NCBI GenBank assembly: GCA_002269645.1
Contig: NIVC01005042.1
Location: 1 to 27,966 of the forward strand
DNA from: Macrostomum lignano
Taxonomy: Eukaryota
Direction of reading: 5' to 3'
DNA length: 27,966 bases
Part shown: piece by piece, positions 4,501 through 24,286 of the stretch
How the letters are laid out: every line of letters starts with the position of its first letter
Position numbering within the stretch: position 1 is the stretch's first letter
The notes under the pieces: model-generated
Told to the model about the DNA's origin: nothing
Database searches by the model: none
The model's input: the letters and a program-made list of their open reading frames with translations, nothing else
Position numbers and translations under genes: made by a program

Positions 4501-7500
4501 AATCGATTATCTGTGCCGGCCTCGCGCAGCCAGGCGCGGCTCACAGCGCACCAGTTGAATTTCTCTGCTCTGCGCTCCGCCGAGATCCCGAGCGTCTCCG
4601 AGAACTCTGATCCCATGCGCGCAATGCTTCTGCCCCTGCTCAGCTCCCAGTGACTCCCCTCCGAGCCTTGTTAGGTCAGCGCTGATGGCCTGAAGAAAGT
4701 TCTTCTGCTCGGGCTGCCGATCTCCGCCACTGCCCCATCAAATTAAAGCATTTGAGGATGCGCCGAAGGCCTGACTGATCCCCTGACACTCGCAGTAATT
4801 GCATTTGTCCACAGCCCGCGGCTCCACGTCTCCCTGATCAGCCGCTTAGCCATCGAGTCCTCATTTGGGAAATCTCCCAGCTTTGTCAGAGGGGTCGAGA
4901 TTTGAAAGACCGCGAGATCATTCATTCGCCAGTGCTCAGATTAGCTATAAGAATGCCGGAACTCACACTGGTCCATCGCAGCGCCCCCCTCCCAGTGCTC
5001 AGATTAGCTATAAGAATGCCGGAACTCACACTGGTCCATCGCAGCGCCCCCCTCCCCAGTGCTCAGATTAGCTATAAGAATGCCGGAACTCACACTGGTC
5101 CATCGCAGCGCCCCCCTCCCCAGTGCTCAGATTAGCTATAAGAATGCCGGAACTCACACTGGTCCATCGCAGCGCCCCCCTCCCCAGTGCTCAGATTAGC
5201 TATAAGAATGCCGGAACTCACACTGGTCCATCGCAGCGCCCCCCTCCCCAGTGCTCAGATTAGCTATAAGAATGCCGGAACTCACACTGGTCCATCGCAG
5301 CGCCCCCCTCCCCAGTGCTCAGATTAGCTATAAGAATGCCGGAACTCACACTGGTCCATCGCAGCGCCCCCCTCCCCAGTGCTCAGATTAGCTATAAGAA
5401 TGCCGGAACTCACACTGGTCCATCTCAGCGGCCCCCCTCCCCAGTGCTCAGATTAGCTATAAGAATGCCGGAACTCACACTGGTCCATCTCAGCGGCCCC
5501 CTCCCCAGTGCTCAGATTAGCTATAGGAATGCCGGAACTCACACTGGTCCATCGCAGCGCCCCCCCCCCCCCAGTGCTCAGATTAGCTATAAGAATGCCG
5601 GAACTCACACTGGTCCATCGCAGCGGCCCCAGCGGCTCCGCCCGCAGCTCAATGACCAGGCGCTTGCGGCACGCAGAGCACCGCTTCACCATCACCCGAA
5701 CCAGCGCGCCTTGGGACATGCTGTGCTCAACAATTCTTGGCTGCAGCTGCAGCCTGCTTGTAGTCCAGTTTCTAATATAACAATTCCTTAGCAACTCGGT
5801 GGCAGAGTCTGAGACCGGAACGCCCCATTATTTGTAATGCTACGTGAGCTGGCGGAGTGCCATAGACATGGGTAGCCGGCTGTTCTTTTGTACTCTATTT
5901 TAGCAGCAGCCGGATGCAGCTGGAGGGGCCCCATCAATAATTAACAAAGCTGGGCTGGCATGAAGGGGGAGACCGCACTGTCCCAGCGGAGATGACGGAG
6001 ATGGAGCAATAGAAGCCGCAGCATCCCTCTGAGCCGGGCATTGGAGGGGAAGGGTTAAGTCTCTCCAAAGTAGGCAAAGTCCCGTTGATTCCCGACAGCT
6101 TAAGGCGGCGGCAAGGCTTGCGGAGTGTTTCACCCGGGCCAGGATTTCAACTGCCAAGTAGCCAGCAGTGGCTCAAGGGCCTGAAGGACTGCTGCATCCA
6201 TTATCAACTGCATTGACTGCTTTCACTACACTAATTAAGTCGGTTTCTCACGGGTCTTGTGCGCAATATGCGGCTACTCGAAAGCAAAAGTGTGCCCCTC
6301 CCCCAATGCCAAATTTCCAGGCAAAACGACCCACCGTGTGGCACTCATTATGCGAGCTCAAGCGGTGTCTACCGGGGGAAGCGGAGCACGAGAAACTTTT
6401 GTATTTATAATTTTACCAACTGGCGCTGGCCTCAGCCGCTTCTAATAGCCGTTTAATAGGCCCTCGGCCCTCGATAAAGAGCAGCGTGCCCGGCCCGCCC
6501 AGGCCACTCACCGAACCGCGTCACTTCAGTCTCCTCGTCGGCTTCGTCAAGCTCCTCCTCAGTCTCAATGAGCTGGCTGCCCCGCAGGCTGTTGTCGCCG
6601 CTGCCACCGCGGCCCTCCGTCACTGTGGCGAACGACTCGCAGCTCTCCCTGGCCGTGTAGAAGGTGGACGCCGAGTCGCTCTGCAGGCCGCCGCTCTGCA
6701 GCTCCTCGGCACTGCGCGCCGCTCTCAGGCGGCTCTCCTGGTCAGCAGCGGCTGCAGTGGCAGCTGCCGTGGCTGAGCTGAAGTCCGGGTTGCTCTTGCG
6801 AATCTCCTGCATCTCGATGTCCCGCTGGATGGCGGAGCCGCGCAGCGCCACCTCCTCCTCCTCTGTCTCCATTGGGCTGGCGTACTTCTCCTCGATCTTT
6901 GCAGCCGGCAGCCACGCGTCCTCGTCGTCCTCCTCCTCATCCTCATCTTCCGAGCTGCTGATCTCATCGGAGCTCTCCTCCAGGATGGGAAACAGACAGC
7001 GGCTGCTGCCGATCATCTGGCTGCTGGCCCTGAGAATGTCGTGGATGCTCTGGTACTCGAAGCTCGGCTGGTCGTACGAGGCGTCCTTCTCGTACGTGTT
7101 GATGATGAAGTCCGAGATGTCGCTCTCTTCGTCCTCGCTGGACTCGGCCGGCGACCCCGGCGGCGCGTCCGTCTCCTCCGACGCCGCCGCAGTTCCAGCC
7201 GTCGATGCCGGTTCCACCGGCTTTGGCAGCGGCGGCAGCGGGGGCGGACGCGACGGCAGCTGCTGTGGCTGGCCGCTCCGAGCTTTGATCTTCAGCAGGA
7301 TGTCGCGCGTCTTGTCGCTGAACTCCGGGTAGTAGGCGGCGTCCTGCTGCGTTGCGTTGGCGTCGCCGCCGCCGCTGCAGAATGTTGAAGTCCCCCAGAG
7401 ACCGCCGCCGCCGTAGACTCCGGTGTCGTGCGAGTCGAGCGGCTCCAGCGAGTCCCGGTCCATGGCAACGGCCCGCGAGCCGGTGGGGTCGCTCTGGGTC

Positions 7501-8156
7501 CGGTCCTCCGGGTGCGGCCGGTGCCTCAGCGCAATCTGCAGCCCGTCCTCGTGGTATTCCTCGGTGAAGTTAGCGGCCAGATCGTCCGCCCCCGACATGG
7601 CCAAGCTGTTGCTGGTGATGGAGATGCCCGCGCCGGCTCTCTGCAGCTTCTCCAGGTGCAGATCGTCCGTGGAGCCCCTGCCGGAGTGGTGCTGCTGCGG
7701 GGAGTCGCCCTCCGTGTCCAGAATTCTGGCCAGCGCTGTGAAGTCCGACTTCACGGAGGTCATGAGGTCCTCGATGCTCGAGGCTCCATCCGGTGGCTGC
7801 CGCGGCTGCGACCACAGCGGCGGCTGCGCAGCGGCGCTTCGGGTTCCGGCGCGACTCTTTAATGGCGAGTAGAAGGCCCCGTCTGCGGCCTCGCCGTCCA
7901 GACTGTCCGAGTCCGACAGGCTCTCATCGCGGAACTCGCGACACTCGTCTTGACTGGGCGACTCGAGAGACATCGGCTGCGGATACTGCTGCTGCTGCTG
8001 AAGCTGCTCGCCGGGCAGCTGGAGGTTCGAGTTGATGCTCAGCATGTCCCGCTTGACCTCGCTGAGCGCAGTTTCCAGGGAGCTGTAGCGCTCGTCCCGC
8101 AGCTGCGCCATTCTGTCCAGGTCAGCACCGTCAGCTGGCGGGACCTCCGCCGACAT
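1..8156 (-). CDS. Multi-exon gene for a large acidic Ser/Glu/Ala-rich, probably disordered protein of unknown function; 3' end lies outside the window
   Basis: Manual splice model join(8156..6512, 3363..3290, 2559..1860, 1510..<1). All introns are GT-AG (donors GTGAGT, GTGAGC, GTGAGT) with matching phases 1, 0, 1. GC3-rich codons. A TGA at 1080-1082 needs a frameshift to bypass. No recognisable domain. Confidence 0.7.
1860..2559 (-). CDS. Gene 1 exon C (TPTPMPRAAQ...PLDQWRS-G)
   Basis: Acceptor CCACTTCAG (AG at 2561-2560); ORF 1789..2547 frame; donor AGCG|GTGAGT at 1859. Confidence 0.75.
2073..2160. repeat. 9-bp tandem repeat (GCCGACTCC)n, about 10 copies, inside exon C
   Basis: Directly visible; reads as SAE or SRR repeats on the minus strand depending on frame. 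Confidence 0.9.
2586..2671. repeat. 14-bp tandem repeat TGGAGATCACAGAC, about 6 degenerate copies, just upstream of the exon C acceptor
   Basis: Directly visible. Confidence 0.85.
3290..3363 (-). CDS. Gene 1 exon B, 74 nt (D-EPMEDVVAAAAAAAAAMSGDSTAK)
   Basis: Acceptor CTCCTCCTGCAG (AG at 3365-3364) and donor AAG|GTGAGC at 3289. Phase 1 in and phase 0 out exactly bridges exons A and C. Too short for the ORF track. Confidence 0.75.
3835..4299. repeat. (GTGA)n / (TCAC)n tetranucleotide microsatellite, about 115 units
   Basis: Near-perfect 465-bp run, with one GAGG interruption near the start. Confidence 0.99.
4929..5630. repeat. ~64-bp minisatellite, 11 copies (CCAGTGCTCAGATTAGCTATAAGAATGCCGGAACTCACACTGGTCCATCGCAGCGCCCCCCTCC)
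   Basis: The AGTGCTC motif recurs at 4931, 4994, 5058, 5122, 5186, 5250, 5314, 5378, 5443, 5507 and 5573. Length variation lies mainly in the poly-C tract. Confidence 0.98.
6512..8156 (-). CDS. Gene 1 exon A (MSAEVPPADG...EETEVTRF-G)
   Basis: 567-aa ORF 6453..8156 with strong GC3 bias; donor TTCG|GTGAGT at 6511. A possible acceptor (CGCAG) about 36 nt upstream of the ATG means an upstream exon cannot be excluded. Confidence 0.8.
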
Positions 8157-9750: not shown

Positions 9751-10189
9751 AATGATAATAATTTGAGAACGCGTATATTTTGTTGCGGTGTGCATGCGCC
9801 ACGCTTACTACTAGCTATTCATACTTGTGAAGAATAATTAAAAAGAATAATCAGTTCGTAAAAATCCTAGCGCAATGCAGGTCTGTGGTAGTTTGAAGCC
9901 ATACTGGCCGCAAATTAATCCCACATCAGCTCAGAATCACTAAGCAGGTGCAGAGCAGTCAATAACTCTTTAAACTCGTCAAGGACGTCTCAAGTACGTA
10001 GAAGGACTGCAAAAAATGAGCAGAGATTTTTTATCTGTTTTGTGTCTTTTAAACTCTCTCCTGACAGTTGCTTTCTGCGTAGGGAAAGCCTTCAAAATGT
10101 TTTCTAAGAAATTGATGTGCCCCAGCCTGCTTTGTTCGTCCTGGGCACTCGTACGGCACGCATTTACAGTCAGGTGAATCCGGGCTCCA

Positions 10190-10238
10190 TCAAGTTGCTG
10201 GTGTCGCCAAAAAGTCTTCCTGAAAACGCAGCTGGTCC
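10190..10238 (-). CDS. cGLR gene probable terminal exon 8 (DQLRFQEDFLATPAT*)
   Basis: Acceptor TTGCTCACCCATATTGAATTCCAG at 10239, phase 2 compatible; TGA at 10192-10190. Other acceptors are possible. Confidence 0.5.
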
Positions 10239-13200
10239 CTGGAATTCAATATGGGTGAGCAAACATGAGGGTGCTGGTCGGTGGCAAGAGACTGCGCATA
10301 TCCGCCATCATATTTTCATTTCCTTGCGTTCAAATATTTATGAAATTGGTTTTAAGTCCAAGGCAAAATGCACTGATTTGCACATTCAGGACTCAGCTCA
10401 GAAACAGTTCCGCCATACAGTCAGTCTGCTCACATTCAGGACTCAGCTCAGAAACAGTTCCACCACACAGTCAGCCTGCTCACATTCAGGACTCAGCTCA
10501 GAAACAGTTCCACCATACAGTCAGTCTGCTCACATTCAGGACTCAGCTCAGAAACAGTTCCACCATACAGTCAGTCTGCTCACATTCAGGACTCAGCTCA
10601 GAAACAGTTCCACCACACAGTCAGCCTGCTCACATTCAGGACTCAGCTCAGAAACAGTTCCACCATACAGTCAGTCTGCTCACATTCAGGACTCAGCTCA
10701 GAAACAGTTCCACCACACAGTCAGCCTGCTCACATTCAGGACTCAGCTCAGAAACAGTTCCACCATACAGTCAGTCTGCTCACATTCAGGACTCAGCTCA
10801 GAAACAGTTCCACCACACAGTCAGCCTGCTCACATTCAGGACTCAGCTCAGAAACAGTTCCACCATACAGTCAGTCTGCTCACATTCACGAATCCGATCT
10901 GTTTACAGCGGTGACTCACAGATTTTCCATTCCCGCCGTTTCCAGGATGCCGTGAATGTCGATAGCAAGGACCAGAGCTTCCAGTGAGGCTTGTCGACAC
11001 TGATCCATCATCGTAGGCTGGTGAGATGGATATTTGGGTTGAAGTGTTAGAAACACATCCATGAAAGTCAGAGATATGAGTAAACGTTGGAATTTTGACA
11101 CAGTGAGAAAATCCGATTGAAAATTTCACCTCATTCAGAATGAAGTCAACAACGATATGGTTGAGCTCGCAGCTGGTGATCATGTCCTTGTTGGCGTGAA
11201 TGGCTCTGACAAGGATGTCGGTGTCGCTGCAGAAATTGAGCAGTAAGAGGAGCTCCTGCGGATCCGCCTCCCCGGCCACGGCGTCCTCAAACAGCTCGGC
11301 CGCCGTTGGCGTCTCCCCCGGAAACAGCTCCAGCCTGAGGCCCTTCAGCAAAGCATCAAAGTTGCAGTAGAACAGAGACTTGTAGCTGCCGGAGCCGCAC
11401 GGGAAAGCTCGCCGGATGGACGGCGGGAGAAACCGAAACTTCGGCCACTCCGCGGCTTCAAAGCAGAACTTCCAGGCGAAATCGCAGCGGCTGACCTGCT
11501 GCCACACGAACTCCTTGGCTTCGGCTGCTGACTTCACGCGCTCGAGCCATCGGACGTGTCGGACAGGTCTGCCTTCAGCCAGCTGTGCTGCCGTCAGCGG
11601 CTCGCCCGCTTTCAGCCGAGCCAAGGCGGTCAGACCGGCTCTGGCAGTTCCAGCCCAGTCGGTCCGCAGCCGGCGGATGTCCAGCATCAGCTGCTCCATC
11701 GTATCGCCCGCAGCCAATGAATCCTCGGGCTCCGCACCCAAGCGATGAAGAAGATTCTGGACTAGGTCGTAGATCGCATGGTATTCAGGACTCGGTCCTT
11801 CCAAGTCGGCGGTTGTGCGTCGGGACAGGGGAACCAGCAGGAAGGGGTGAAAGATGACTGCGCCTACAAAGTTGCGGCTCTGGATAAGTAAAACCATGCG
11901 ATTATTTTACCCTTACACTGAGAATTTTACCTTTCTCACTCGGAGTGAGCTTCTGGCAATACTTCGCCAAGTGAATGGGCAGTTCGTCGAGGACGTCACT
12001 GACAGCACGAGCAATATCCCGCCTGTTGTGACGCCCTTTGCGCAGGTAAACAGCGGCGTCGCGCAAGAAGAAATGCGTCATGCAGGTAGTCGGGCCGCTC
12101 CTGCTGTCTTCTAGATACCGAATCAGCATCCTGAGCGACTTCTGCACCAACTGAACCAGACAGGCCGGCTGCCAGTCCTGTACGGGCGTCTCGTCGAGCA
12201 TGTAGAACAGCAGGTTTTTCGCGTGGTAGGTTTTCAGACCGCTGACTCGTTTTGAGATGACGCGCTTGATCAGGTATTTGAGCAGGATGAACAGCTGACC
12301 CTGCACGCTGGTGAGGCTTTGCATGAGCGCCCGCTCCAGCATGTTTGTGCTCACCCGCATCCTGTCGCCCTCCAAGCCAGGCGGCGAAGCTGCCACCGCG
12401 TGACATTGAGTCGCGTCCCGGATGGCTCTGAGCTGCTTCATCACGCTGGTGCTGATATTCGTGCGGTAGTTCAGCTCAAGCAGCTGTATTGGCGGGTAGT
12501 TGCAGCAGGGCAGCGCGTTCACGTTGTCGAACGCAGGTCGCAGCATGGAACCACGGTGGGGTCTTGTCGGGCAGCTCACTGGCATTTTAAGAAACAATTT
12601 TCAAAACATTTTGGCGTATAAATTCTGTGATAATACTTTTTTTACGTCACCAAAGTCTCAAATTCTCTCACCGTCGCAGCTGTACTTGATGTGACCGTCC
12701 TCATAATCAACGGGCTGGCACCTGTTCTCGCAGTTTCTGCAGCTCGCCACTGAGCCGTCACCAATGTGAAGCTGCTTCGTGTTCGCTATGATGGTGACGT
12801 CAATGTCCGAGTCGGGGTCAGTCCGGCCGCAGAGTCGCGTCAGGCAGTTCCCCCAGCCATCGGCGAAGCTACCAACGACGGAGACGCCCGGGCCCAGTCT
12901 CCGAATGGCGATGTCCTCCATCACAGCGGCGGTGCCGGCCTGCAGCACCGAGTTCGCCGAGCAGAATCCGGCGTCAAGCATGGCCAGATGGACATCAGCG
13001 CTGGCTAGATCTGGCGGTTGGAGACTGCAGGTTGGTGGACAGCGGCTTTTCTATTATTTCTAGCCAACCTGCATTTGCAAAATGAAATAAATTCAAGAGA
13101 ACTCGAGAAGCTCACAACTTAGCGACCGACATCAGTATTGAGAAATCTGGAAAGAACGGCACCAAAGCCGCGCCGCAATGCCCGAAAAGACGCGCACTGT

Positions 13201-16163
13201 AGTGATAGCGCTTCGCAAAGTGCAGCACAAAGTCGATGTGGCCTCGGTAGAAGCAGAATTCCAAGCAGCGCACGAGCTCCCTCAGCTCGATGACGGACAG
13301 CTGTAGCGTTCGGCTGCTGCGATCGGAGCTCTGCACCTTCTGCCGGGCCCTGAAAAACGCCTCAACGACGTTCGCGTGTCCATTCTGAGCGGCCAATCCG
13401 ACCAATAGGGAGCCCTCATCGGACAGAAGACAGTCGTCGGCCCCAGCCTGTAGAAGGCTTTCAACGACGTCAGTGTGCCCCGAAACTGCTGCATCATAGA
13501 GTGGCGTGTGCCCGTTGGGCTGAACAAAGTCTACATCTGCCGATTGCGCAATGAGCAGCTGGACTATGTCAGCGTGCCCAAACAGTGCGGCAACAGAAAT
13601 TGGAGTCGTGCCGCTGGCCTCGTCGGGCAGATCGACCTGTTTGGTGTTGATGTTGCTGAGAGGCCTCAGAAATTTCTTTTAGGGTAAAAAAATACGTGAG
13701 TTTCATACCGCGGCCCCGGCACGGATGAGACTGAGCACAATAGCGGTGTGTCCGTTCTGAACCGCCGCCCACAGCGGCGAGCCGGGACTGCCCGGGTGCT
13801 CACAATCCACGTCGGCGAACGCGGCCAGAAGTTGGGTGACCAGCTTGTCGTGTCCGTTGTTCGATGCGATCCAAAGGGGCGTTGCACCGTCGCTCCACCT
13901 GAAAATGTTAGAATTCCTGACTGGATTTGAGAGACTGCTCAAGGTTTTAGGCCATCGTATATTCGAGTATATCAATCAGGTTACTGTAAGTTTTTTTCAT
14001 GCTAATTGTAGAAAAACCCAGTACGTACCTGTGAACATTAACCATGGCTGCAGCATTGATCAGCTTCAGAGCAATATCTGCGTGCCCATTCTGGGCTGCC
14101 GCGTGCATCGGCGTGGCACCCGTACGCGTTCGGTGATTGGAGTCGGCCGATGCTTGAATCAGAGCACCAGCAATGTCTGCGTGGCCGCACTCGGACGCTA
14201 TGCTCAGTGCAGACGAGCCGCTTTTCTTAGACAACTCAACATTTATCCCAGCGGTAGCGAGAAACTTCTCAACGATCGCCCGATGGCCCATCTGAGAGGC
14301 GATCCACATGGGAGCGATGCCGTCGCTGCGTTGAAGATTCACGTCCGCACCGGCTTTAATCAGAGAATCGACGATATCCGACTGGCCGCTCTCAGCAGCC
14401 TTCCACAGCACCGTGCAGCCGCTTCGGTCTTGCGCATCCACTTCGGCAGAGGCTTGAAGCAGCTTTTCTACAGCTCTGGCTTGCCCTTTGCCAGCGGCGA
14501 TTCGCAGAGGCGACATGCCAGCCTTGTTCTCGTAATCAGAAGCAGCTCCCGCTTGAAGCAGCAGCTCAACAACCTGGTCATAGCCACGCTGGCAAGCCGT
14601 CCATATTGGAGTGTATCCGTGCTTCTCTTCGTGGTCAACATTAGCCGAGGCTTGTATGAGAGATTTTGCCACAGAGTAGTGTCCGTACTCAGCTGCGATG
14701 TACAATGGAGAAGCGCCGTGGCTCGTGGGAATGTCAACGTCTCTTGTTGCCTTCAGCAGCTGGTCCACAGCGGCAGAGTGGCCGTACTGTGCGGCAACGT
14801 ACAGTGGCGTCGAATCAGACATTCCGCGGATGTCTGGCTCCGCGACGCCAACCTCAATCAGTTTGGCAATCAGATTAGCGAAGCCTTTCTGAGCAGCAAT
14901 CCAAAGCGGAGACGTGCCAGAATGTCTCTTCAAGTCCGGATTGGAACCAGCCGCAAGCAGCTGGTCAACCATGGCAGCAGCACCCGCGCTTGTAGCAACG
15001 TACAGCGGAGACTTGCCTTCTACTGGTTCAACAATGTTAACATCTGCCCATGCTTTAATTAAAAGCCGAGTCGCTTGAACGCTTCCGACTTCAACAGATG
15101 TGTACAGAGGTGTCTGCCCGGCACTTGTTGCCATGTCCACATTGGCGCAAGCTTGAACCAGCTTATTGACTGTCGCAATGTCCTTCCTTTTTACTGCCCA
15201 GTGCAGAGGCGATTTCCCATCCAGCGTTGATGGCGCATCGAGCCAGGCGCCCGCTGCAATCAGCTGGTCGATCGTCTTCGATCCCGGAAGCCGAATTGAA
15301 ACTTCGAGCGGCGTGACGCCGTGCACCGTTCTCGTGTCAAGCTCGGCACCAGCTCGGATCAAGAGATTCGCTATTTTAACGCAATTGTTTTGCACTGCCA
15401 TGTACACCGGGGTGACGCCATTGTGACCGGCGGTGTTGACATCGGCACCTGCGTGCATTAGTTGGCGGACGACGCAAACTTTGTCGTACTCCGAGGCGAT
15501 GAGCAGGGCGGTGATGCCATCCTGCTTGCGGCGCGTGTTGACATCGCCTCCTGCGCTAATCAGCATGCTGGTGATTTCAGAAGAACCATGACGGGCAGCG
15601 AAATGCAGCGCACAGCCGCCTTGAACTTTATCGCGAATATTCACGTCGGGGCAGCCGAAATGAATGAGCCTGCTCACAATTTCCGGGCTGTCTCCTATGA
15701 CAGCAACATGCAGCGGTGACCAGCCGTCGCGTCTGATATGATCCAGCTTTGGCAAACCATTTTTAATCAGCAGAGCGGCACAGTCTAAATGCTTGAATTG
15801 AATTGCCGCATGCAGTGGTGTGGAGCCTCTGGCTGTTGCCAAGGTTACGTCAGCCGATGCAGCAATTAGTGCGGCCAGTATTTCCGATTTCCCAGCTTGA
15901 GCGGCTATGAAAGCTGCGGTGGCTCCATCTGGCTGCACCTGTATGTCAACGTCAGCGCAGGCGCGGATGAGCAACCGAACAGTCTCGGCTGCCCCACCCT
16001 CAGCCGCGTGGTGCAGAGCTGCCCATCCGGCAGAGTCGGTCTCATTGGAATCGGCACCGAGGCGGAGAGACTGCGCCATTTTCTGCAAGTCCCCAGCGAT
16101 AGTCGCTTTCAGCAACTCGCCAGGCAAAGGAAATTCTACGCTGTCAGCTGCGCCTTCCGCCAT
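10190..16163 (-). CDS. Ankyrin-repeat / cGAS-like (Mab-21 family, cGLR) nucleotidyltransferase fusion protein, about 1588 aa, 8 exons
   Basis: Model join(16163..14029, 13898..13709, 13675..13116, 13024..12672, 12578..11931, 11863..11130, 11017..10920, 10238..10190) = 4767 nt. All introns are GT-AG, phases are consistent and there is no internal stop. About 26 ankyrin repeats, then the GSFADGWG...DSDID motif and Mab-21 C-lobe motifs (RVSTNMLERALM, LLKYLIK, GLKTYHAKNLLF, W, HFF). An in-frame acceptor at 16194 allows an extra upstream exon. Confidence 0.85.
10381..10888. repeat. 50-bp minisatellite, 10 copies plus a partial one, in the last intron of the cGLR gene
   Basis: CACATTCAGG recurs at 10381, 10431, ... 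10831, exactly every 50 bp. Confidence 0.98.
10920..11017 (-). CDS. cGLR gene exon 7 (PTMMDQCRQASLEALVLAIDIHGILETAGMEN-L)
   Basis: Acceptor CTCACCAG at 11018; donor ATCT|GTGAGT at 10919; phases fit. Confidence 0.75.
11130..11863 (-). CDS. cGLR gene exon 6: unassigned C-terminal helical region
   Basis: Acceptor CTTTGTAG at 11864 (phase 1, SEK-G-AVIFHPFLL); ORF 10848..11897 frame; donor GAG|GTGAAA at 11129. Confidence 0.85.
11931..12578 (-). CDS. cGLR gene exon 5: third catalytic strand and Mab-21 C-terminal helical lobe
   Basis: Acceptor AATGCCAG at 12579; AFDNVNALPCC, CHAV, RVSTNMLERALMQSL, LLKYLIK, GLKTYHAKNLLFYMLDE, THFF; donor AAAG|GTAAAA at 11930. Confidence 0.92.
12672..13024 (-). CDS. 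cGLR gene exon 4: NTase N-lobe with GS and DxD motifs
   Basis: VSVVGSFADGWGNCLTRLCGRTDPDSDIDVT; donor GACG|GTGAGA at 12671. The 5' boundary is uncertain. Confidence 0.9.
13116..13675 (-). CDS. cGLR gene exon 3: 3 ankyrin repeats plus helical linker
   Basis: SGTTPISVAALFGH, NGHTPLYDAAVSGH, LVGLAAQNGH in one open frame; donor AAGTT|GTGAGC at 13115. Both boundaries have alternatives. Confidence 0.75.
13709..13898 (-). CDS. cGLR gene exon 2: 2 ankyrin repeats
   Basis: Acceptor ATTTTCAG at 13899; WSDGATPLWIASNNGH...PLWAAVQNGH; donor GCG|GTATGA at 13708. Confidence 0.9.
14029..16163 (-). CDS. cGLR gene exon 1: about 21 ankyrin repeats
   Basis: 766-aa ORF with repeated G-x-T/S-P-L-x-x-A...G-H...V..LL..GADVN units at about 33-aa spacing; ATG at 16163; donor CACAG|GTACGT at 14028. 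Confidence 0.95.
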
Positions 16164-17942
16164 TTTCAATAGACGCCTGTTTTCCTTCGTCAGCTGAATT
16201 TGCCGCTTGCTCCAAACTTTATGAGCGCTAACGAGCAGTAAGTGCAAGCTTGCCTGGCATTGTCATAAGCTCGTATAGCATTTTAGGCCTTGACATAAAT
16301 ACGCACTGGGTCGGTCGCATACTGCAGCGTACAGCAAGCTGTACTAAATTTGCGTACATCATTTTTCATAGGCCAGTGTACACTCAAGCGGGAAGACTTG
16401 GCTCTCATCTACGCATTTGCTAGTGCGCATAGATCTCACTGAACCTGTTTTAACAAGGTACTAAAACTATATAAAGCAAATTTTCTCGAAGCATATATTT
16501 TTCTATATTTTCTATGGCAAGGGAAGGAAAAATCAGAAATTAGGACAACGGTTAAAGCCCGTCTAGGAGCAGGGTAGAAAAAACCTGACGAACAGAGATT
16601 TAGGGAGGATGCACAGTATCGTATATATAGTGTACTCAGAGGACAAGCAGCAGTTTTTCAATGTCTGCGACTAATTTCTCTGTTTGGCTTGTTATTTATA
16701 CAGTTTACTCTGAGTGCGCAAAATTTATTTTATTCTTATAACATTTACCGACCGGATGCCGCCCGGTACATGTAATGGTATATCATGATAGGCTGTCCTG
16801 CAGAGTCTCAGTTTGAAAGTTATTCGATTTCAAGACGTAAATCAGCAAAATAGGTCAGGGGCTTCTCAGAATAAGAATTAGCACCGGCAACAGTACATGC
16901 ATGACAGCTGAGAGGCCGCGGGTACAGCTAGGCGATATGAGAATGAAAATTGTCGTTGAGCATAGTAGGCGCTGAAATTTTTTTCGTTAAACAATACTTT
17001 TCTTCGACATCCGTCTGTGCTGTAGATCGCAGTAGCCACAGCTATGGATTTGAGGTGGCCTTGAAGTTTCAGCTGGTCCTTTGGCTCGGCGCTCACCTCT
17101 AGCTCTATTTGATGTCAGGCCGCGCGTTTCATTATCTAAAAGCCGGTTTGAGAAGTCAAGTCAGGTTAACCTCAGGTTATTGATGCAGTCCACTCGGGCC
17201 CGATGTCAGTCCGACGTTCCCAGCTCTCACTATGACTACTGATGCAGCTAGTGTTCGTTCTCTGTTGGGAGGCCGTTGCTTCGCCCCTGTTTCTTTGCCA
17301 ACCGTGGGTTCTCGTGGTGTTCCTCTCCGGCTCCGGGCTAAGTACTAAAGCCAATCTTGCATAATCACACGTTTGCATACATTTATTATCGCTTCGTTCA
17401 TCAGTTATTGGATTGGATGGCTCGATTATGCGTGTGAACGAGTCTTAAGCCGTTAAAAATCTAAACAAACTTATGCATGCTAATAGAAGCAGTAAGCGGC
17501 TAAAATAAATTTATGGACTTTCGAGTCCTGAGAAAATGACTTTTGGTTCGAAGAATTGTATTTCCTTTTGAATGAAGGTTCACTCTTGTGCGTCAGCGTG
17601 CATTGGCGTGTGTACTATTGTACTATACAATAATGCCTTCAGCCTAACTAGCACGATGATGACGACGTGATTTGCCAAGTTATCCGTGCATGAGTCATAG
17701 CTTGATTAGGATACAAATGACTAATGAGTCACGACAAATCGGCTTTGTTTTCTTTGTTTCTACTACAGTCTACAATGTCAGCGTTTCACTTTTCTTAACA
17801 GCCAAATATTGGCGATTTATTGGCAATTCTGAGTCAAGGTTAAAAAGGGAAAGAAAGCGTTTTTTATTTAGAAATCCCTTTTGACTTTTAGTCTAATTGG
17901 AATTGTATCATTATCTATATAAGCCCAAAAACTCATTTCTCG

Positions 17943-20677
17943 GCTGACTATGTACTAGCTAGGTTAGGCATGGCATAGGTTAAACTTACTACATACACAT
18001 AGTAATTTAATTACTAATTCAGATATATGAGCCAACACTAATACTAATAGATAAGGCAGTGCTTATCAATGAGTCGTTGTCATTGACATTAGCTAAGCTT
18101 AGTTTACTGATATCTTATGCTAACTAAAGCCTAGGCTATATACATAGGCCTTTGGCTAAATTTTTGGCCTCTCTTAGCCCTGTCTAGGGCCTAAGTTGTT
18201 CTCCCTTGCCTTTGGCCTTGGATTCACCAATTCCTAGGCTTTGGCAATATGCCTAGGGATTCGTTATTCATTTAGTTCATTAGGCTTACATTTAATATTT
18301 AATAATATGGGTGCCTAGAGCTAGACAGTGTAGACTTACTGTTTGTATTTATATATTAAATGCCTATTGCCTATTTTATTTAAAGACAACACTACCAATA
18401 TTGGAATAGACTTGATTTTTATATGATTAGATAATTAGATCTAACTTTCAATGGTAATAATACTAGGGCCTAACACTTATAGTAATAGCTAGGCTAGCTA
18501 TCTTATTTCAGTTTATATTTTTAAATATTATATAAAATAAATTATAATCAGGGGTGGCAGAGCTGGTGGAACTAGGTTTTTTGTGCAAATGGCAATGGGT
18601 GCGAATAGCATCCTGGTCTTGAAAATCGCACCCTGAAATTTGACTTAGGGTGTGAAAAGTGCACCCAAGTTATGGACAAAAAACCCAGGCCTAGGAAGTA
18701 TAATAAATATAGGTGCTGCTAGGTGACTAGCCATAGTTATATTTATAGTAATTTGACTCTGGTATAGTTAAAGAACTTAGCTAAATTGATTTGAAAGTGG
18801 CCTTATATATAAAAGTTATTTATTCTTATCATTCCTAATCTTCCTTTGAGTCTCTATATTGTTTTAGTGTACCTAGCTATACTCCTTAGTCCTTAGTATA
18901 TTATACTAAAATTCCTTAGACTAAAAAGCTATATATAGCTTTTAGATATGCCATGCAATAGCTAAGCTATTAGTTGGGTTGCACATATGGCCTGAATAGG
19001 GTAAATATAATTGCTATGGCTATAGGCCAAGCTAATATCACCCTACAGATAATTAATATGCCTCCTAGTGTTCCATGCACTTTAGTAGTCTAAAAGAAGA
19101 AAGCAATGCATGCAAATAAAATAAGAAAGATTAGAAAAAATGATCTTCTATAGCCAACCATTGGTTGGTTTGTTTGAGACTTGTCAATAAAAACAAAAGA
19201 CAACAATTAATAATTGATTATGAAATATTATTATAGTTATTATTAATATTAAAAATGATTTTTATATCATTTTTGATATTCAATGAATTGAGAAAAATAG
19301 GAAAAACAACCTAAAAGGAAATCATTCCTTACAAGTTTATAAAAATAAAATAGTTTTTACTAATTTTATTTTTAATTTAAACTTAGCAAGATATAAACTG
19401 CTAATCCTGCTAATCCAAATAATATAATTTTGCATAGATTTATAGTGGCAACTCTCTTCTTCACTATCTTCTTTATAGAAGTCAAGAAGTTAACAAAATT
19501 CCGAAATCATAGCTGACAAATGGGTAATTGGCTACAGTGAATATTGCAAAATGATTGCAGTAAATGATTGCTAAGACCCACAAGCCTATAAATGTTGAGT
19601 TATGAATCTCAGCTTAATTGTGCCTTGTTTTTCAAAGGGTATAAATCATACTCCTGAGCAACACAAATGTATATTCATGAGTTTTAGTGTAGCCAAAGGA
19701 GGGAACAAAAAGTAGTAAAGCTAAAACCCAGTTTGAAATATTCTGTTGCTTTAAAAGTTATATGCTTCTCTAAGTTTTTCCATAGATATCTCTGTCATAG
19801 TAGCCTAACCAAGAAGTTTGAGTGCATTCAATCAAAAGGACTTTTGCTACTTTTTGCTAGCTTATTGGCTTACTATAAGTCTATAGTTGAGCTCTTGCTG
19901 CATTTTAGTTTAAAATATTTATAACTTTTGTTTCCATTATCTGTTTTTATTGATGTCAAAGAGTAATACAAGCTATAAAAAAGAGAGTTGCTGCTATAAA
20001 TCTGTGTAACAATGTTATTTGTATCATCAGAATAAGATATAATGAAAAGTAACACTACTTTTGGGATAGCCCTTGTCCCTTTATAGAATATTTTAATATT
20101 AAGAATTAATTTCAGTGTTTCTTCCATAAATAATGTTTGATAGAGTTTTAATGAATAAGAATTCCTATTTCAGTTTGACTTATTAACATTATTATAGCTA
20201 GATTCTAATCAAATAGCTAGAATTTAATTTTGTCTCATTTTTGTTTCATTTAATACAAGTTCCAAATAATAGTTTGGACTTTTTGAACTATTTAATAATA
20301 GTTCCAAATTCTGACAGAAAGTATCCACATTAACACTGAAGCAATTTGTGCACAGATTTGACAAGTGTGTTTTAGTCTGTCTAAGCTTAGCTCTTGTGCA
20401 GTGTAGACTAGTGTAGTTTATCTATTGAAGACCAAAATTAGCATTGACAAATAGGTGCTGTCAAGCTGAAATAGCCATATCCTTAACACTGAAAAAGCCA
20501 ACCCCAATTGAAGGCTTTGGGTTTCATTAAACTGCTTGTGTTTTGCTGCAACAATAAAACTAGGCCAATTGCTTTTGGCATTTGGTATGCCCAGCTGCCC
20601 ACTGTTTACAAGCTGGTCATTGCTAAAATTAAGGCTCTGTTGCATTTTTGCACCTCCTGTAAGCCTGCTGGAATTAG
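17943..20677. other. AT-rich, nearly CpG-free, TpA-rich block
   Basis: About five CpG found by eye (18075, 18262, 18602, 18627, 19502) in about 2.7 kb. CTAG, CCTAGG, TAGCTA and TATA are abundant. Flanking sequence contains frequent CpG. Confidence 0.85.
18572..18693. mobile_element. Small MITE-like relic with imperfect 16-bp terminal inverted repeats
   Basis: CTAGGTTTTTTGTGCA (18572-18587) versus the reverse complement of 18673-18688, CTGGGTTTTTTGTCCA, match at 14/16. Internal GGGTGC/GCACCC motifs occur in both orientations. No clear target-site duplication. Confidence 0.4.
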
Positions 20678-20760
20678 CGCTGTTTCGTTTAGTGTCAGCC
20701 CCTCTCCACCTGGCTGCTGTGTATGTTATTGGAGTTTCCAATCAGCAGTTTGCCATCTTG
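19400..20760 (-). pseudogene. Decayed coding-like sequence within the CpG-free block
   Basis: Residual ORFs 19873..20127 and 20418..20741, plus a stop-riddled continuation ending ...DFYKEDSEEESCHY. Family not identified. Confidence 0.25.
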
Positions 20761-21169
20761 GCCCCGGTGCTATTAATAATGTGCACGCCACCATCTCACT
20801 AGCTCCCAGTTGAATTCTGTTTATATCAGCAGCCGCCCCCGGCTCCGTGCGCCCTCTGCCTGGCACAAATTAAACCCGATCGATAACCCCCCGCCCCCCC
20901 CTAATTTAGTTGATTTGCGCGCCACAGCAGTCCGCTCTGATTTTATCCGCCGGCCGTGGCAGTGGAATAATTTCATATTATTTAGCTGGTTGCCCCTCCC
21001 CCCCGGGGCGCTGGCTCGTGCTAGCAATTAGTCTTGTACTCAGTTTATTCCCTCTCGCTCTGCGCCGCGGGTTGGGGTGGGCGCCGCGGAGGTTGGGGTG
21101 GCTGTGCTGAGTGTACATCCTATTCTCGCCAGCCGCCCGGTCCCACTGCGCCGTTCTGTTTAGTGCGTG

Positions 21170-21176
21170 TATAAAA
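21170..21176 (+). promoter_or_regulatory. TATA box upstream of profilin
   Basis: TATAAAA in a GC-rich context about 160 bp upstream of the profilin ATG. Confidence 0.5.
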
Positions 21177-21328
21177 CAGGCGCCAGGCTTTAAAATCGGC
21201 CTTTCTTTGCCTTTTCTCTCTGAGCCGGAAACATTTAACAATTTTATTACCACCGAGCTGCCTGCCGCCTTTTTTACTCTCTGCTGCAACTTTCCGCCTT
21301 TCTGTTTCATTCGCCAGCTGCCATCGCC

Positions 21329-21739
21329 ATGTCTTGGGACTCCTGGGTGTCGAACCTCCTTCAGTATCCCGGCGTCAACTTCGGCGCCATCTGCGGCAAC
21401 GACGGCAGCGTGTGGGCCAAGTCCGAGAACTTCGTCGCCTCGCCCGAGGAGCTGCAGGCCCTGGCCGCCGGGATCGGCAAGAACAACGCCGGCGAGTTCC
21501 AGTCCTTCAAGCTGAACGGCGAGAAGTTCATGACTATCCGGCTGTTGAACCGCGAGCTGGACGCCAAGAAGCTGCAGTCCAGCGTGACGGTGATGGGCTG
21601 CACCCAGTGCTTCGTGATCGGCGGCTACATTGCCTCGTCCGAGGGCTCCGGCGAGCCCAATATGGGTACCGGCGGCGGTCAGAAGGTGAACGTGGCCGTG
21701 TCCAAGCTGAAGGACAGCCTCGTGGCCAGCGGCTACTGA
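21329..21739 (+). CDS. PFN: Profilin (intronless, 136 aa)
   Basis: Profilin hallmarks: MSWDSWV N-terminus, GAICGNDGSVWAKS, LNGEKFMTIR, C-terminal helix VSKLKDSLVASGY. Strong GC3 bias; GCCATG start context. Confidence 0.97.
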   Translation: MSWDSWVSNLLQYPGVNFGAICGNDGSVWAKSENFVASPEELQALAAGIGKNNAGEFQSFKLNGEKFMTIRLLNRELDAKKLQSSVTVMGCTQCFVIGGYIASSEGSGEPNMGTGGGQKVNVAVSKLKDSLVASGY

Positions 21740-22023
21740 AGCCGCGGGTGCTGCCGGACTCCTGTTAGACCCGAAGCTATCTAATCATTGCTCCCGCCGT
21801 TCTCCCCATTCCCTCAGCTGCCCTTCCCCAATTCCGCAGTTACTCCCGCAAATTTGTGTCGCTTCCATCGCTGAAGTCTTCGTTCATTTTGTTTTACTCT
21901 AAAAAAATTTTTTGCTGGCGCCCCACGGCTACCGCGAGTTTTCTTGCTTTCCTGTGCAACGTTTGACGCGCCAGTTCTCTCCGCTCCTTCCATGTTGTGT
22001 CCTCTTTCTTTGAGAGCAAGCAG

Positions 22024-22029
22024 AATAAA
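22024..22029 (+). terminator. Candidate polyadenylation signal for profilin
   Basis: First AATAAA after the stop, about 285 nt downstream; further copies near 22252-22340. Confidence 0.4.
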
Positions 22030-23695: not shown

Positions 23696-24286
23696 CTGAG
23701 CACTTTGGAGTGAATGGAGCTGAGCACTCGATCTGGGTGAATGGAGCTGAGCACTCTGGGGTGAATGGAGCTTAGCACTCTGGGGTGAATGGAGCTTAGC
23801 ACTCTGGGGTGAATGGAGCTTAGCACTCTCGGGTGAATGGAGCTGCATGAGCACTCTAGGGAGAATAGAGCTGAGCACTCTGGGGTGAATGGAGCTTAGC
23901 ACTCTCGGGTGAATGGAGCTTAGCACTCTCGGGTGAATGGAGCTGAGCACTCTAGGGAGAATAGAGCTGAGCACTCTGGGGTGAATAGAGCTGAGCACTG
24001 AATTGAGCTGACCACTCTGGGGTGAATAGAGCTGACCACTCTGGGGTGAATAGAGCTGACCACTCTGGGGTGAATTGAGCTGAGCAATCTGGGGTGAATT
24101 GAGCTAAGCAATCTGGGGTGAATTGAGCTGACCACTCTGGGGTGAATTGAGCTGACCACTCTGGGGTAAATAGAGCTGAGCACTCGGGTGAATAGAGCTG
24201 AGCACTCTGGGTGAATGGAGCTGAGCACTCTGGGGTGAATGGAGCTGAGCACTCTGGGGTAAATAGAGCTGAGCACTCGGGGTGAA
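23696..24286. repeat. 24-bp minisatellite (GAGCACTCTGGGGTGAATGGAGCT consensus), about 24 copies, intergenic
   Basis: Directly visible; produces spurious 8-aa repeat ORFs (VLSSIHPR, SAQLHSPQ). Confidence 0.97.

What the first reader, a model, noticed from the sequence alone, without database searches (positions are those of the whole stretch)
10190..16163. About 26 ankyrin repeats fused to a cGAS-like (Mab-21/cGLR) nucleotidyltransferase: candidate invertebrate innate-immune sensor-cyclase
Seen: the ORF track shows separate ankyrin and Mab-21 fragments, but canonical splice sites join them into one 4767-nt stop-free frame with every phase matching. Known: cGAS and animal cGLRs are pattern-recognition enzymes that make cyclic dinucleotides for STING-type receptors and are usually triggered by nucleic acid; ankyrin arrays are protein-binding scaffolds. 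Domain-fused Mab-21 proteins exist in invertebrates, so the fusion class may not be new. Inference: an array of about 900 aa could let this enzyme sense proteins (pathogen effectors, or modified self as in guard/decoy systems) or hold it autoinhibited. That would be a poorly characterised route to second-messenger signalling.
Basis: partly seen in the sequence, partly recalled or inferred. Interest (0 to 1): 0.88.

Follow-up and report, generated by a model that had tools for sequence, protein, structure and literature searches.

The report
Ankyrin-fused cGAS-like enzyme gene, flatworm
This is a real, intact flatworm (Macrostomum lignano) gene that joins about 25 ankyrin repeats to a cGAS-like nucleotide-signalling enzyme, but the gene is already in GenBank, its class was catalogued in 2023, and what it senses and makes is still unknown.

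Summary
Eight minus-strand exons (16163-10190), joined by seven GT-AG introns, give a 4728-nt stop-free CDS (not 4767). Its 1575-aa translation is identical to GenBank PAA46126.1 (BOX15_Mlig020632g1, Macrostomum lignano). The window is that assembly's whole 27,966-bp contig.

The protein has three parts:
- An N-terminal cap plus 25 ankyrin repeats (aa 13-880).
- A divergent Mab-21/cGAS-type nucleotidyltransferase (aa ~956-1285). Its active-site residues G1000-S1001, D1022, D1024 and D1084 are conserved across the family.
- A conserved C-terminal domain of about 245 aa with no fold match in PDB or BFVD.

A model of a 42%-identical paralogue hits cGAS, MAB21L1 and Sp-cGLR1. Profile-profile comparison with Pfam-Mab-21-bearing mollusc and annelid proteins gives 99.8% probability.

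The single-gene reading is supported indirectly. The GenBank annotation is RNA-seq-guided and aware of trans-splicing. A second genomic copy has dN/dS 0.26. Independent gene models share the same ankyrin-to-enzyme junction.

The class is not new. Li et al. 2023 describe ankyrin-fused cGLRs, list M. lignano examples, and screened five M. lignano relatives, none flagged active. At least 73 clusters of this family exist, about 45 with ankyrin repeats. Product, ligand and receptor remain untested.

Verdict: new member of a known kind, moderate-low interest.

The parts
10190..16163 (-). Whole CDS of BOX15_Mlig020632g1 (PAA46126.1). It has 8 exons: 16163-14029, 13898-13709, 13636-13116, 13024-12672, 12578-11931, 11863-11130, 11017-10920 and 10238-10190. 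The stop codon TGA is at 10192-10190.
   Evidence: The spliced translation is identical to P0162/PAA46126.1. All introns are GT-AG.
13322..16127 (-). Ankyrin array, aa 13-880: an N-terminal cap plus 25 repeats with a ~33-aa period. It is interrupted by introns 1 (14028-13899) and 2 (13708-13637). Acidic, pI 5.6.
   Evidence: Pfam Ank_2 E 1e-149 and Ank E 9.5e-119. Repeat register. pI.
13006..13321 (-). Non-repeat linker, aa 881-955. It contains intron 3 (13115-13025, 91 nt, donor GTGAGC, acceptor CTGCAG, phase 2). Splicing this intron removes the in-frame TGA at 13114-13112 and joins the ankyrin part to the enzyme.
   Evidence: The same junction peptide LMSVAK|FLQPPDLA is found in P0024, P0163, P0164 and P0165.
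11856..13005 (-). Mab-21/cGAS-type nucleotidyltransferase, aa 956-1285, with introns 4 (12671-12579) and 5 (11930-11864). pI 8.7.
   Evidence: hhalign against Pfam-Mab-21-bearing proteins gives prob 99.8%, E 1.4e-29 over 301 columns. Foldseek of the paralogue model hits cGAS, MAB21L1 and Sp-cGLR1. Intron 4 has the same position and phase as in the paralogue gene P0005.
12868..12873 (-). Codons for G1000-S1001, the GS of the NTase motif, within VVGSFADGWGN.
   Evidence: G in 19/21 and S in 21/21 family sequences. Aligns with the GS of the mollusc/annelid Mab-21 set.
12799..12807 (-). Codons for D1022-I-D1024, the two metal-binding aspartates, within DSDIDV.
   Evidence: Both are D in 21/21 sequences. 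Aligns with SDxD of the mollusc/annelid set.
12526..12528 (-). Codon for D1084, the third catalytic acid, within RPAFDNVNALPCC.
   Evidence: D in 19/21 and E in 1/21 sequences. Aligns with the conserved D of 'D.V.A.RC.SWP'.
12001..12291 (-). Mab-21_C (PF20266) HhH/H2TH-like helical lobe, aa 1163-1259.
   Evidence: Pfam E 5e-7 to 2e-6, 28.4-30.2 bits against a cutoff of 24.1.
11130..11861 (-). Family-specific C-terminal domain, aa 1284-1527 (exon 6). Conserved motifs are FHPF, DxAWKFCF, NFDAL and QEL..L.(Y/F)C. Acidic, pI about 5. The fold is unknown.
   Evidence: AlphaFold model pLDDT 82.9, pTM 0.85. No match in PDB (best E 1.6) or BFVD (best E 1.6). Conserved in paralogues.
10381..10888 (.). 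50-bp tandem repeat of 10.2 copies inside the last intron (intron 7, 10919-10239). It creates the long spurious plus-strand ORFs at 10117-10987.
   Evidence: TRF; ORF list; intron bounds.

Best explanation
Shown: the locus is one protein-coding gene of Macrostomum lignano. Its 1575-aa cytosolic product has three modules. (i) A solenoid of 25 ankyrin repeats plus a cap. (ii) A divergent but catalytically intact cGAS/Mab-21-type nucleotidyltransferase of the cGLR kind, with G1000-S1001, D1022, D1024 and D1084. (iii) A conserved C-terminal domain of about 245 aa with an unknown fold.

Inferred: it works as a ligand-gated second-messenger synthase. At rest the enzyme is inactive. The ankyrin solenoid is the part that varies between paralogues, so it probably acts as the recognition or regulatory scaffold. 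It would bind a protein, either a pathogen protein or an altered self protein, or an intramolecular segment. Engagement or release would then allow the NTase lobe to close on two NTPs and make a cyclic di- or oligonucleotide using the DxD...D metal site. A downstream receptor, not yet identified in this animal, would read that product.

The gene belongs to a large lineage-specific expansion in M. lignano: at least 73 clusters at 50% identity, about 45 of them with ankyrins. This is the pattern expected of a diversifying pattern-recognition family.

The confidence of 0.55 is for the whole statement. The shown part alone (a single ANK-cGLR-type fusion gene with an intact active site) is about 0.9. 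The inferred immune second-messenger role is about 0.5.
For: One gene:
- The spliced translation equals PAA46126.1.
- That annotation is RNA-seq-guided, and genes are cut at experimentally mapped spliced-leader and poly(A) sites (PMC5730564).
- The same junction appears in the second genomic copy and in three independent UniProt models.
- The paralogue gene P0005 also has an intron in the linker, and it shares intron 4 in position and phase.
- No in-frame ATG lies between the upstream stop (13053) and M963, while homology to the first NTase helix extends upstream of M963.

Functional gene: both copies are intact, with dN/dS 0.26.

cGLR-type enzyme:
- Foldseek's top 50 hits are all cGAS, MAB21L1 or Sp-cGLR1, prob 1.0, target TM 0.5-0.58.
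- hhalign gives prob 99.8%, with the GS, SDxD and D motifs aligned.
- The catalytic residues are nearly invariant in the family.
- Distant hits carry Pfam Mab-21 plus Mab-21_C.

Sensor-family pattern:
- 377 hits, 73 at E<1e-30. Every hit above E 1e-19 that I looked up by name is M. lignano.
- Ankyrin number varies from 0 to 25 between paralogues.
- There are tandem gene pairs.
- One relative is fused to a caspase domain.

Literature: Li et al. treat this family as predicted cGLRs and note ANK fusions as putative ligand-interaction modules.
Against: - No activity, product, ligand or expression data exist for this protein.
- Five M. lignano relatives were put through the nucleic-acid-stimulated in-vitro screen, and none is flagged among the 15 active enzymes.
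- The fold match rests on a 42%-identical paralogue, because the spliced window protein could not be submitted.
- Pfam's NTase model PF03281 does not hit the protein directly, and a PDB sequence-profile search finds no cGAS.
- I did not see the RNA reads myself.
- The stop-88 nt-AG layout at intron 3 also fits a trans-spliced operon junction. Such junctions have a mode of about 100 bp in this species.
- STING is reported lost in flatworms, although that rests on Schistosoma only (PMC4117786). Its presence in M. lignano was not tested.
- The role given to the ankyrins is pure inference.
Confidence: 0.55

Rival explanations
1. Two genes in a spliced-leader operon. An ankyrin-only protein ends at the TGA at 13114-13112. 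A separate Mab-21 mRNA is trans-spliced at the AG at 13026-13025 and starts at ATG 12981 (M963).
For: - 30% of M. lignano genes are trans-spliced and 15% lie in operons, with a modal intergenic distance of about 100 bp (PMC8629364).
- Here the distance from stop to acceptor is 88 nt.
- Several stand-alone paralogues begin at the equivalent Met (P0007, P0011, P0013, P0018).
Against: - A strong cis donor (GTGAGC) sits at the stop codon, and cis-splicing keeps the frame.
- The transcript-based, trans-splice-aware annotation keeps one gene, 'g1'.
- The same junction is present in 4 other models.
- Starting at M963 would truncate the conserved first helix of the NTase domain.
- The spliced leader's own ATG would be out of frame at this acceptor (SL sequence, frame; inference).
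- There is no AATAAA in the 88 nt.
Confidence: 0.07
2. The fusion is real, but the enzyme is not an immune cyclic-dinucleotide synthase. It could make a linear or other nucleotide product, nucleotidylate another substrate, or have a developmental or housekeeping role like MAB21L1/2. In that case the ankyrins would simply localise it.
For: - The relatives are not flagged active in the cGLR screen.
- NTase pI in the family is mostly near neutral (median 6.3), unlike nucleic-acid-sensing cGLRs as described by Li et al..
- MAB21L1 is among the fold hits.
- Flatworms are reported to lack STING.
- Long ankyrin arrays are classic anchoring scaffolds, and ankyrin-1/2 are the top ANK hits.
Against: - The full GS/DxD/D site is conserved under purifying selection, whereas Li et al. 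state that Mab21L1/2/3 lack a predicted functional active site.
- A massive lineage-specific expansion with variable N-terminal repeats is atypical for housekeeping enzymes.
- A caspase-fused relative exists.
Confidence: 0.25
3. A decaying duplicate. The window copy would be a non-functional haplotig or paralogue of Mlig007069.g1.
For: - The window is a short contig collinear at 92-98% identity with a 1.55-Mb scaffold.
- The assembly is known to be redundant.
Against: - Both copies keep all 8 exons without gaps or stops.
- There are 24 aa differences in 1575, and dN/dS is 0.26.
Confidence: 0.03

Closest known systems
Ankyrin-fused cGLRs catalogued by Li et al. 2023 (PMC9980059). Examples are M. 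lignano PAA86972.1, PAA45980.1, PAA68676.1, PAA58690.1 and PAA67649.1, and the ANK-cGLRs of the coral Stylophora pistillata.
   Same: - N-terminal ankyrin repeats are followed by a cGLR-type NTase on one polypeptide.
- The M. lignano examples share the family signature GS(F/Y)(A/S)(D/E)(G/A)WGN...DSDIDV and the FHPF-type C-terminal extension.
   Different: - This protein and its twin have the longest ankyrin array seen in the family: 25 repeats against 2-17 elsewhere.
- It was not found in the parts of the paper's tables that are held.
- No member of the class has a known ligand or product.
Vertebrate cGAS (e.g. PDB 6CT9, 4K97)
   Same: - Bilobed NTase fold. It is the best structural match of the family model.
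- The GS plus three-acid catalytic site.
   Different: - Only 11-13% identity, and not detectable by sequence-profile search of the PDB.
- There is no evidence for a cGAS-type H(X5)CC(X6)C zinc thumb. The conserved H1060, C1091-C1092 and C1125-H1126 have a different spacing.
- It carries an 880-aa ankyrin array and an extra C-terminal domain.
- The activator is unknown.
Mollusc/annelid Mab-21 proteins, often TPR-fused (e.g. Mercenaria XP_053382747.1, Sinanodonta KAL3855470.1, Lamellibrachia KAI0227343.1)
   Same: - They are the nearest relatives outside Macrostomum by profile (E 1e-13 to 1e-8).
- hhalign gives prob 99.8% over the whole NTase, with the motifs aligned.
- They too follow the repeat-domain-plus-cGLR logic.
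   Different: - Their repeats are TPR and lie C-terminal, not ANK and N-terminal.
- They are recognised directly by Pfam PF03281, which the flatworm family is not.
- They lack the flatworm C-terminal domain.
MAB21L1 (PDB 5EOM/5EOG)
   Same: The same fold; it is among the top hits. The Mab-21_C lobe is shared.
   Different: According to Li et al., Mab21L1/2/3 lack a predicted functional active site. Here the site is intact.
Ankyrin-R/B 24-repeat membrane-binding domain (PDB 4RLV, 7TW3)
   Same: A comparably long uninterrupted ANK solenoid. These are the best ANK matches in the PDB.
   Different: There is no spectrin-binding or death domain. Here the solenoid is attached to an enzyme.

Membership tests
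cGAS-like receptor (cGLR) / Mab-21 nucleotidyltransferase superfamily | Bilobed cGAS/Mab-21 fold: an NTase core lobe plus a helical lobe. | tested here: met
   The AlphaFold model of paralogue P0002 (42% identical over this region; pLDDT 76.6, pTM 0.77) gives Foldseek top-50 hits that are all cGAS, MAB21L1 or Sp-cGLR1 (E about 1e-5, prob 1.0, TMt 0.5-0.58).
cGAS-like receptor (cGLR) / Mab-21 nucleotidyltransferase superfamily | Sequence homology of both lobes to Mab-21 domains. | tested here: met
   - Mab-21_C PF20266 is hit directly above its cutoff (28.4-30.2 against 24.1 bits).
- PF03281 (the NTase lobe) is NOT hit directly.
- However, the family profile finds proteins that carry PF03281 plus PF20266.
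- hhalign to those proteins gives prob 99.8%, E 1.4e-29, over 301 columns from helix 1 to the C-lobe.
cGAS-like receptor (cGLR) / Mab-21 nucleotidyltransferase superfamily | Intact active site: GS, then (D/E)h(D/E)h, then a third acidic residue. This separates predicted enzymes from Mab21L1-like proteins. | tested here: met
   G1000-S1001, D1022-I-D1024 and D1084 are present. They are conserved in 19-21 of 21 family sequences and align with the same motifs in the outgroup profile.
cGAS-like receptor (cGLR) / Mab-21 nucleotidyltransferase superfamily | Ligand-dependent synthesis of a cyclic di- or oligonucleotide. | not testable with these tools
   This needs biochemistry. Five M. lignano relatives in the screen of Li et al. 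are not flagged active.
cGAS-like receptor (cGLR) / Mab-21 nucleotidyltransferase superfamily | A cognate receptor (STING or other) in the same genome. | not tested
   Only 28 kb of the genome was in hand, and it encodes no such receptor. The literature says STING was lost in flatworms, but that rests on Schistosoma only.
Ankyrin-repeat proteins | Tandem ~33-aa repeats with the TPLH...G...V..LL..GA..N signature. | tested here: met
   Pfam Ank_2 E 1e-149 and Ank E 9.5e-119. There are 25 repeats in register plus a cap. The PDB profile hits are ankyrin-1/2, NOMPC and DARPins.
ANK-fused cGLR architecture (Li et al. 2023, Fig. 1C / Table S2) | ANK repeats and the cGLR domain on one polypeptide. | tested here: met
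   - The in-frame GT-AG splice gives exactly PAA46126.1.
- The annotation is RNA-seq-based and aware of trans-splicing.
- The junction is shared by 4 other models.
- I did not view direct reads.
Spliced-leader operon (dicistronic unit) | A trans-splice acceptor used about 100 nt after the upstream gene's stop and poly(A) site. | tested here: inconclusive
   The geometry fits (88 nt). However, the TBONE-cut annotation shows one gene, and no AATAAA is present. Read-level data are not available here.

The most novel reading that the evidence does not exclude
The ankyrin-cGLR family of Macrostomum lignano, of which this is the longest-armed member, is a flatworm-specific repertoire of protein-sensing pattern-recognition enzymes. 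In this reading the variable ankyrin solenoid recognises pathogen or damaged-self proteins rather than nucleic acids. The orphan-fold C-terminal domain is a new regulatory or oligomerisation module. The nucleotide signal is read by a receptor other than canonical STING, in a phylum textbook accounts describe as having lost cGAS-STING signalling.
Probability: 0.2. Interest if true: 0.7.

Novelty: new member of a known kind. Interest (0 to 1): 0.35.

Why it matters
Most characterised cGLRs are stand-alone enzymes triggered by double-stranded nucleic acid. What the repeat-fused minority senses is an open question that Li et al. raise themselves. M. lignano is a tractable laboratory flatworm with transgenesis and an annotated genome, and it carries dozens of ankyrin-fused copies. 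This makes it a practical place to ask three things: whether a cGLR can be gated by a protein-binding scaffold, what the conserved extra C-terminal domain does, and what reads the signal in a phylum said to lack STING.

For this scan, the main value is calibration.

Tried and rejected
- (1) The first homologue search returned only 35-50%-identical M. lignano proteins. I provisionally took the window for another Macrostomum species. The exhaustive representative search and cluster look-up showed the window is M. lignano itself and the protein is PAA46126.1.
- (2) I first ended the CDS at the TGA at 10918-10916 (4683 nt, 1560 aa). The deposited protein and its twin use one more intron, across the tandem repeat, to stop at 10190 (4728 nt).
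I used paralogue P0002 for the enzyme and window exon 6 for the C-terminal domain.
- (4) A PDB sequence-profile search was swamped by ankyrins when full-length rows were included. With trimmed rows it found no cGAS, so sequence alone is too divergent.
- (5) The C-terminal domain has no Pfam hit and no fold match in PDB or BFVD.
- (6) I looked for a paralogue with ANK and NTase in one continuous exon, which would prove fusion without RNA. None was found in the loci fetched; all have an intron in the linker.
- (7) For the stand-alone paralogue P0016, the annotated upstream gene is a C-type lectin, not an ankyrin gene. It therefore gives no support for a general ANK/Mab-21 operon arrangement.
- (8) The gene identifiers Mlig020632 and Mlig007069 occur in no paper of the library. 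No paper characterises an ANK-cGLR.
- (9) Rfam found nothing in the window.
- (10) I ran no further search on STING. A word-indexed search with a vertebrate query would probably miss a flatworm orthologue, and a negative result would be uninformative.


Full report
**What is in the sequence**

The minus strand between 16163 and 10190 carries a run of long ORFs. Pfam labels them as ankyrin repeats (13947-16247 and 13703-13975) and as Mab-21_C (11902-12597). Reading the minus strand, I joined them through GT-AG introns and checked each phase by script.

The final model has eight exons:
- 16163-14029
- 13898-13709
- 13636-13116
- 13024-12672
- 12578-11931
- 11863-11130
- 11017-10920
- 10238-10190

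The introns are 130, 72, 91, 93, 67, 112 and 681 nt long. The CDS is 4728 nt with a single terminal stop and encodes 1575 aa.

The length given (4767 nt) is 39 nt too long, and no combination I tried reproduced it. The last intron holds a 50-bp tandem repeat of 10 copies (10381-10888). This repeat explains the long spurious plus-strand ORFs there.

**Identity of the window and of the gene**

A first homologue search with the enzyme half returned only Macrostomum lignano proteins at 35-50% identity. An exhaustive profile search of 1.84 billion representatives then returned P0024. It is 1575 aa long and 98.5% identical to my model, and it shares every splice junction.

Its cluster contains PAA46126.1 (BOX15_Mlig020632g1; UniProt A0A267DAF2, 'Mab-21-like HhH/H2TH-like domain-containing protein'). 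That protein sits on a contig of exactly 27,966 bp, the length of the window. The eight-exon translation is identical to PAA46126.1. The window is therefore a whole small contig of the M. lignano Mlig_3_7 assembly (GCA_002269645.1).

The window is collinear at 92-98% nucleotide identity with part of the 1.55-Mb scaffold NIVC01000020.1. That scaffold carries the twin gene PAA93879.1, with a profilin gene upstream in the same arrangement. This fits the known redundancy of the assembly, which has 180 Mb in blocks at least 95% identical (PMC5730564). The two copies keep all exons ungapped and differ at 24 residues. Their dN/dS is 0.26, so the gene is under purifying selection and is not a decaying duplicate.

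**Anatomy of the protein**

- **Ankyrin array.** Residues 13-880 are an N-terminal cap plus 25 ankyrin repeats in a ~33-aa register. Pfam Ank_2 scores E 1e-149. 'About 26 repeats, about 900 aa' is therefore right. The array is acidic (pI 5.6).
- **Linker.** A 75-aa non-repeat linker follows.
- **Enzyme.** The enzyme spans aa ~956-1285, with pI 8.7.
- **C-terminal domain.** The last ~290 aa match nothing in Pfam. They are conserved in the paralogues through the motifs FHPF, DSAWKFCF, NFDAL and QEL..L.YC.

**Is the enzyme cGAS-like?**

Direct evidence is thin. Only Mab-21_C passes Pfam's threshold (28-30 bits against 24.1). PF03281 does not hit. A family profile finds no cGAS among PDB sequences. 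Three independent lines close the gap.

1. **Fold.** The model has pLDDT 76.6 and pTM 0.77. Its 50 best Foldseek matches are all cGAS, MAB21L1 or the coral cGLR Sp-cGLR1 (prob 1.0, E about 1e-5, target-normalised TM 0.5-0.58).
2. **Transitive sequence link.** The family profile reaches annelid and bivalve proteins at E 1e-13 to 1e-8. Those proteins carry Pfam Mab-21 plus Mab-21_C, often with TPR repeats. hhalign between the two alignments gives 99.8% probability, E 1.4e-29, over 301 columns from the first helix to the C-lobe.
3. **Active site.** The catalytic signature is intact and aligned in that comparison. G1000-S1001 are conserved in 19/21 and 21/21 family sequences. D1022 and D1024 are conserved in 21/21. 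D1084 is D in 19/21 plus one E.

According to Li et al., this active site is what separates predicted cGLR enzymes from Mab21L1/2/3.

**The C-terminal domain**

Window exon 6 (aa 1284-1527), modelled with its paralogues, folds confidently (pLDDT 82.9, pTM 0.85). It has no match in the PDB (best E 1.6, TM below 0.3) or in BFVD. In the exhaustive search it appears alone only in two short fragments. It therefore looks like a module specific to this family. This is the least-explained part of the protein.

**One gene or two?**

Exon 3 runs into a TGA (13114-13112) unless the donor GTGAGC at 13115 is used. The acceptor lies 88 nt further on, and the next Met (12981) coincides with the first residue of several stand-alone paralogues.

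M. lignano trans-splices 30% of its genes and has 15% in operons, with a modal spacing of about 100 bp (PMC8629364). A dicistron is therefore a serious rival.

Evidence against the dicistron:
- Cis-splicing keeps the frame, and the 91-nt intron is a typical size.
- There is no in-frame ATG between the upstream stop at 13053 and M963. Homology to the first, confidently modelled NTase helix extends upstream of M963.
- The GenBank annotation comes from a genome-guided RNA-seq assembly. Its transcripts were cut at experimentally mapped spliced-leader and poly(A) sites (PMC5730564), and it keeps a single gene, 'g1'.
- The identical junction peptide occurs in the twin gene and in three independent UniProt models from the earlier assembly.
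- The paralogue gene P0005 also has an intron in the linker. It shares the next intron (after GHI+5 residues, phase 1) with the window gene.

I did not see read-level data, so I leave about 7% for the operon reading.

**The family**

The profile search gives 377 hits at E below 1e-3 and 73 clusters (at 50% identity) at E below 1e-30. Every hit above E 1e-19 that I looked up by name is M. lignano.

I built an ankyrin HMM from the window's own repeats. It finds two or more repeats in about 45 of those 73 clusters. The window protein and its twin have the longest array, 25 repeats against 2-17 elsewhere.

Genes occur in tandem; there are two ANK-Mab-21 genes within 14 kb in L001. Other fusions exist:
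- PAA93319.1 has the order ANK, Mab-21, ANK, caspase.
- One UniProt model combines WSC, ANK, Mab-21 and RING. Gene-model merging cannot be excluded for that one.

NTase pI in the family is mostly near neutral (median 6.3). The window protein, at 8.7, lies at the basic end.

**What is already known**

Li et al. 2023 (PMC9980059) report the following:
- 87% of about 3,000 predicted cGLRs are stand-alone, and some are fused to TPR or ankyrin modules.
- Coral cGLRs fused to ANK and death domains are shown.
- Nematodes and most platyhelminths have only Mab21-like proteins.
- Table S2 lists M. lignano proteins with Ank_2 domains: PAA67649.1, PAA58690.1, PAA68676.1, PAA86972.1, PAA45980.1 and PAA68216.1.
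- Table S3 shows that five M. lignano members of this same family were cloned for the 140-enzyme screen with poly I:C and dsDNA (rows 89-93; row 91 matches P0012). None is flagged among the 15 active enzymes.
- The authors note that many cGLRs appear inactive, probably for lack of the right ligand.

PAA46126.1 and PAA93879.1 were not found in the held files, which are partly truncated. I found no paper that characterises an ANK-cGLR and none that mentions this gene. Wu et al. [quoted passage not shown]

**Most likely mechanism**

Shown:
- One cytosolic polypeptide.
- A very long ankyrin solenoid.
- A catalytically intact cGLR-type NTase.
- A conserved orphan C-terminal domain.
- Purifying selection.
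- Membership of a large lineage-specific expansion with variable repeat arms.

Inferred:
- The enzyme is a ligand-gated nucleotide second-messenger synthase.
- The ankyrin array is its recognition or regulatory arm. It either binds a foreign or altered-self protein, or it holds the enzyme off through an intramolecular contact until displaced.
- The signal is read by a receptor still to be identified.

I put about 0.9 on 'single ANK-cGLR-type fusion gene with an intact active site'. I put about 0.5 on 'immune second-messenger synthase'. I give much less to any specific role for the ankyrins.

The main rival, at 0.25, is a real fusion whose enzyme does something other than immune cyclic-dinucleotide signalling.

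**Verdict**

The novelty is limited. The gene is deposited. The architecture is published as a class and is common in this species. Close relatives have already been through a biochemical screen.

This is a new, uncharacterised member of a known kind. The open points are the ligand, the product, the receptor and the C-terminal domain.

Noticed in passing
window 1-27966 versus L004 (NIVC01000020.1, 1264240-1290348): The whole window is a near-duplicate of a segment of a 1.55-Mb scaffold: 92-98% nt identity, collinear, with the same genes. It is probably a haplotig or a copy from the duplicated large chromosome of the DV1 line.
   Followed up: yes
window 10381-10888: A 50-bp tandem repeat of 10.2 copies lies inside the gene's last intron. 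It produces 240-265-aa spurious ORFs on the plus strand. The same intron is 816 nt in the twin locus against 681 nt here, so the copy number probably differs.
   Followed up: partly
window 11130-11861 (-): Exon 6 encodes a confidently folding ~245-aa domain (pLDDT 83) with no Pfam, PDB or BFVD match. It is conserved in the M. lignano family only.
   Followed up: yes
window 21329-21739 (+): A single-exon profilin gene (136 aa, Pfam Profilin E 8.5e-23) lies 5.2 kb upstream of the ANK-cGLR gene and is divergently oriented. The twin locus has the same arrangement.
   Followed up: partly
window 6453-8156 (-), also 1789-2547 (-) and 352-1083 (-): These are long acidic, low-complexity ORFs without Pfam hits. 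They probably belong to the large gene (2303-aa product) annotated downstream of the twin gene in L004 (18152-26109).
   Followed up: partly
window 3835-4299; 4929-5630; 23696-24286; 25578-26059: Repeats are dense here: (GTGA)116, a 64-bp unit x 10.9, a 24-bp unit x 24.8, and a 17/54-bp proline/glycine-like unit. They produce many spurious long ORFs (the LTHS and PGxxG series). GC content swings from 0.29 to 0.71 across the window.
   Followed up: no
window 24663-25574 (+): A 303-aa ORF with no Pfam hit. Its C-terminal stretch (GWVFRFHGQTFFVTTFAPFYGPEDSRF) reminded me of YqcI/YcgG-type proteins. This is from memory only and was not tested.
   Followed up: no
L001 10001-13742 and 17434-23512 (M. 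lignano NIVC01001685.1): Two ANK-Mab-21 genes lie in tandem within 14 kb. This shows local duplication of the fused architecture.
   Followed up: partly
P0082 = PAA93319.1 (M. lignano, 2111 aa); P0069 (UniProt A0A1I8I4L5, 2381 aa): Relatives carry further fusions. P0082 has ANK, Mab-21, ANK and a C-terminal caspase (Peptidase_C14, E 2.8e-27). P0069 has WSC, ANK, Mab-21 and RING. If these models are not merges, they link the family to cell-death and ubiquitin signalling.
   Followed up: no
window aa H1060, C1091-C1092, C1125-H1126 (codons within 12700-12400, minus strand): These His and Cys residues flank the third catalytic Asp. They are nearly invariant in the family and partly conserved in the mollusc/annelid clade (RC.SWP, C..VP.GH). 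They may form a structural metal site that differs from the cGAS zinc thumb.
   Followed up: partly
L002 (M. lignano NIVC01001984.1) about 2012-4032, 10001-13304 and 18491-22360: tblastn finds three Mab-21-family segments in 23 kb. The third is preceded by ankyrin-like sequence. They only partly coincide with the called genes, one of which is annotated as a C-type lectin. The family may be under-annotated.
   Followed up: no
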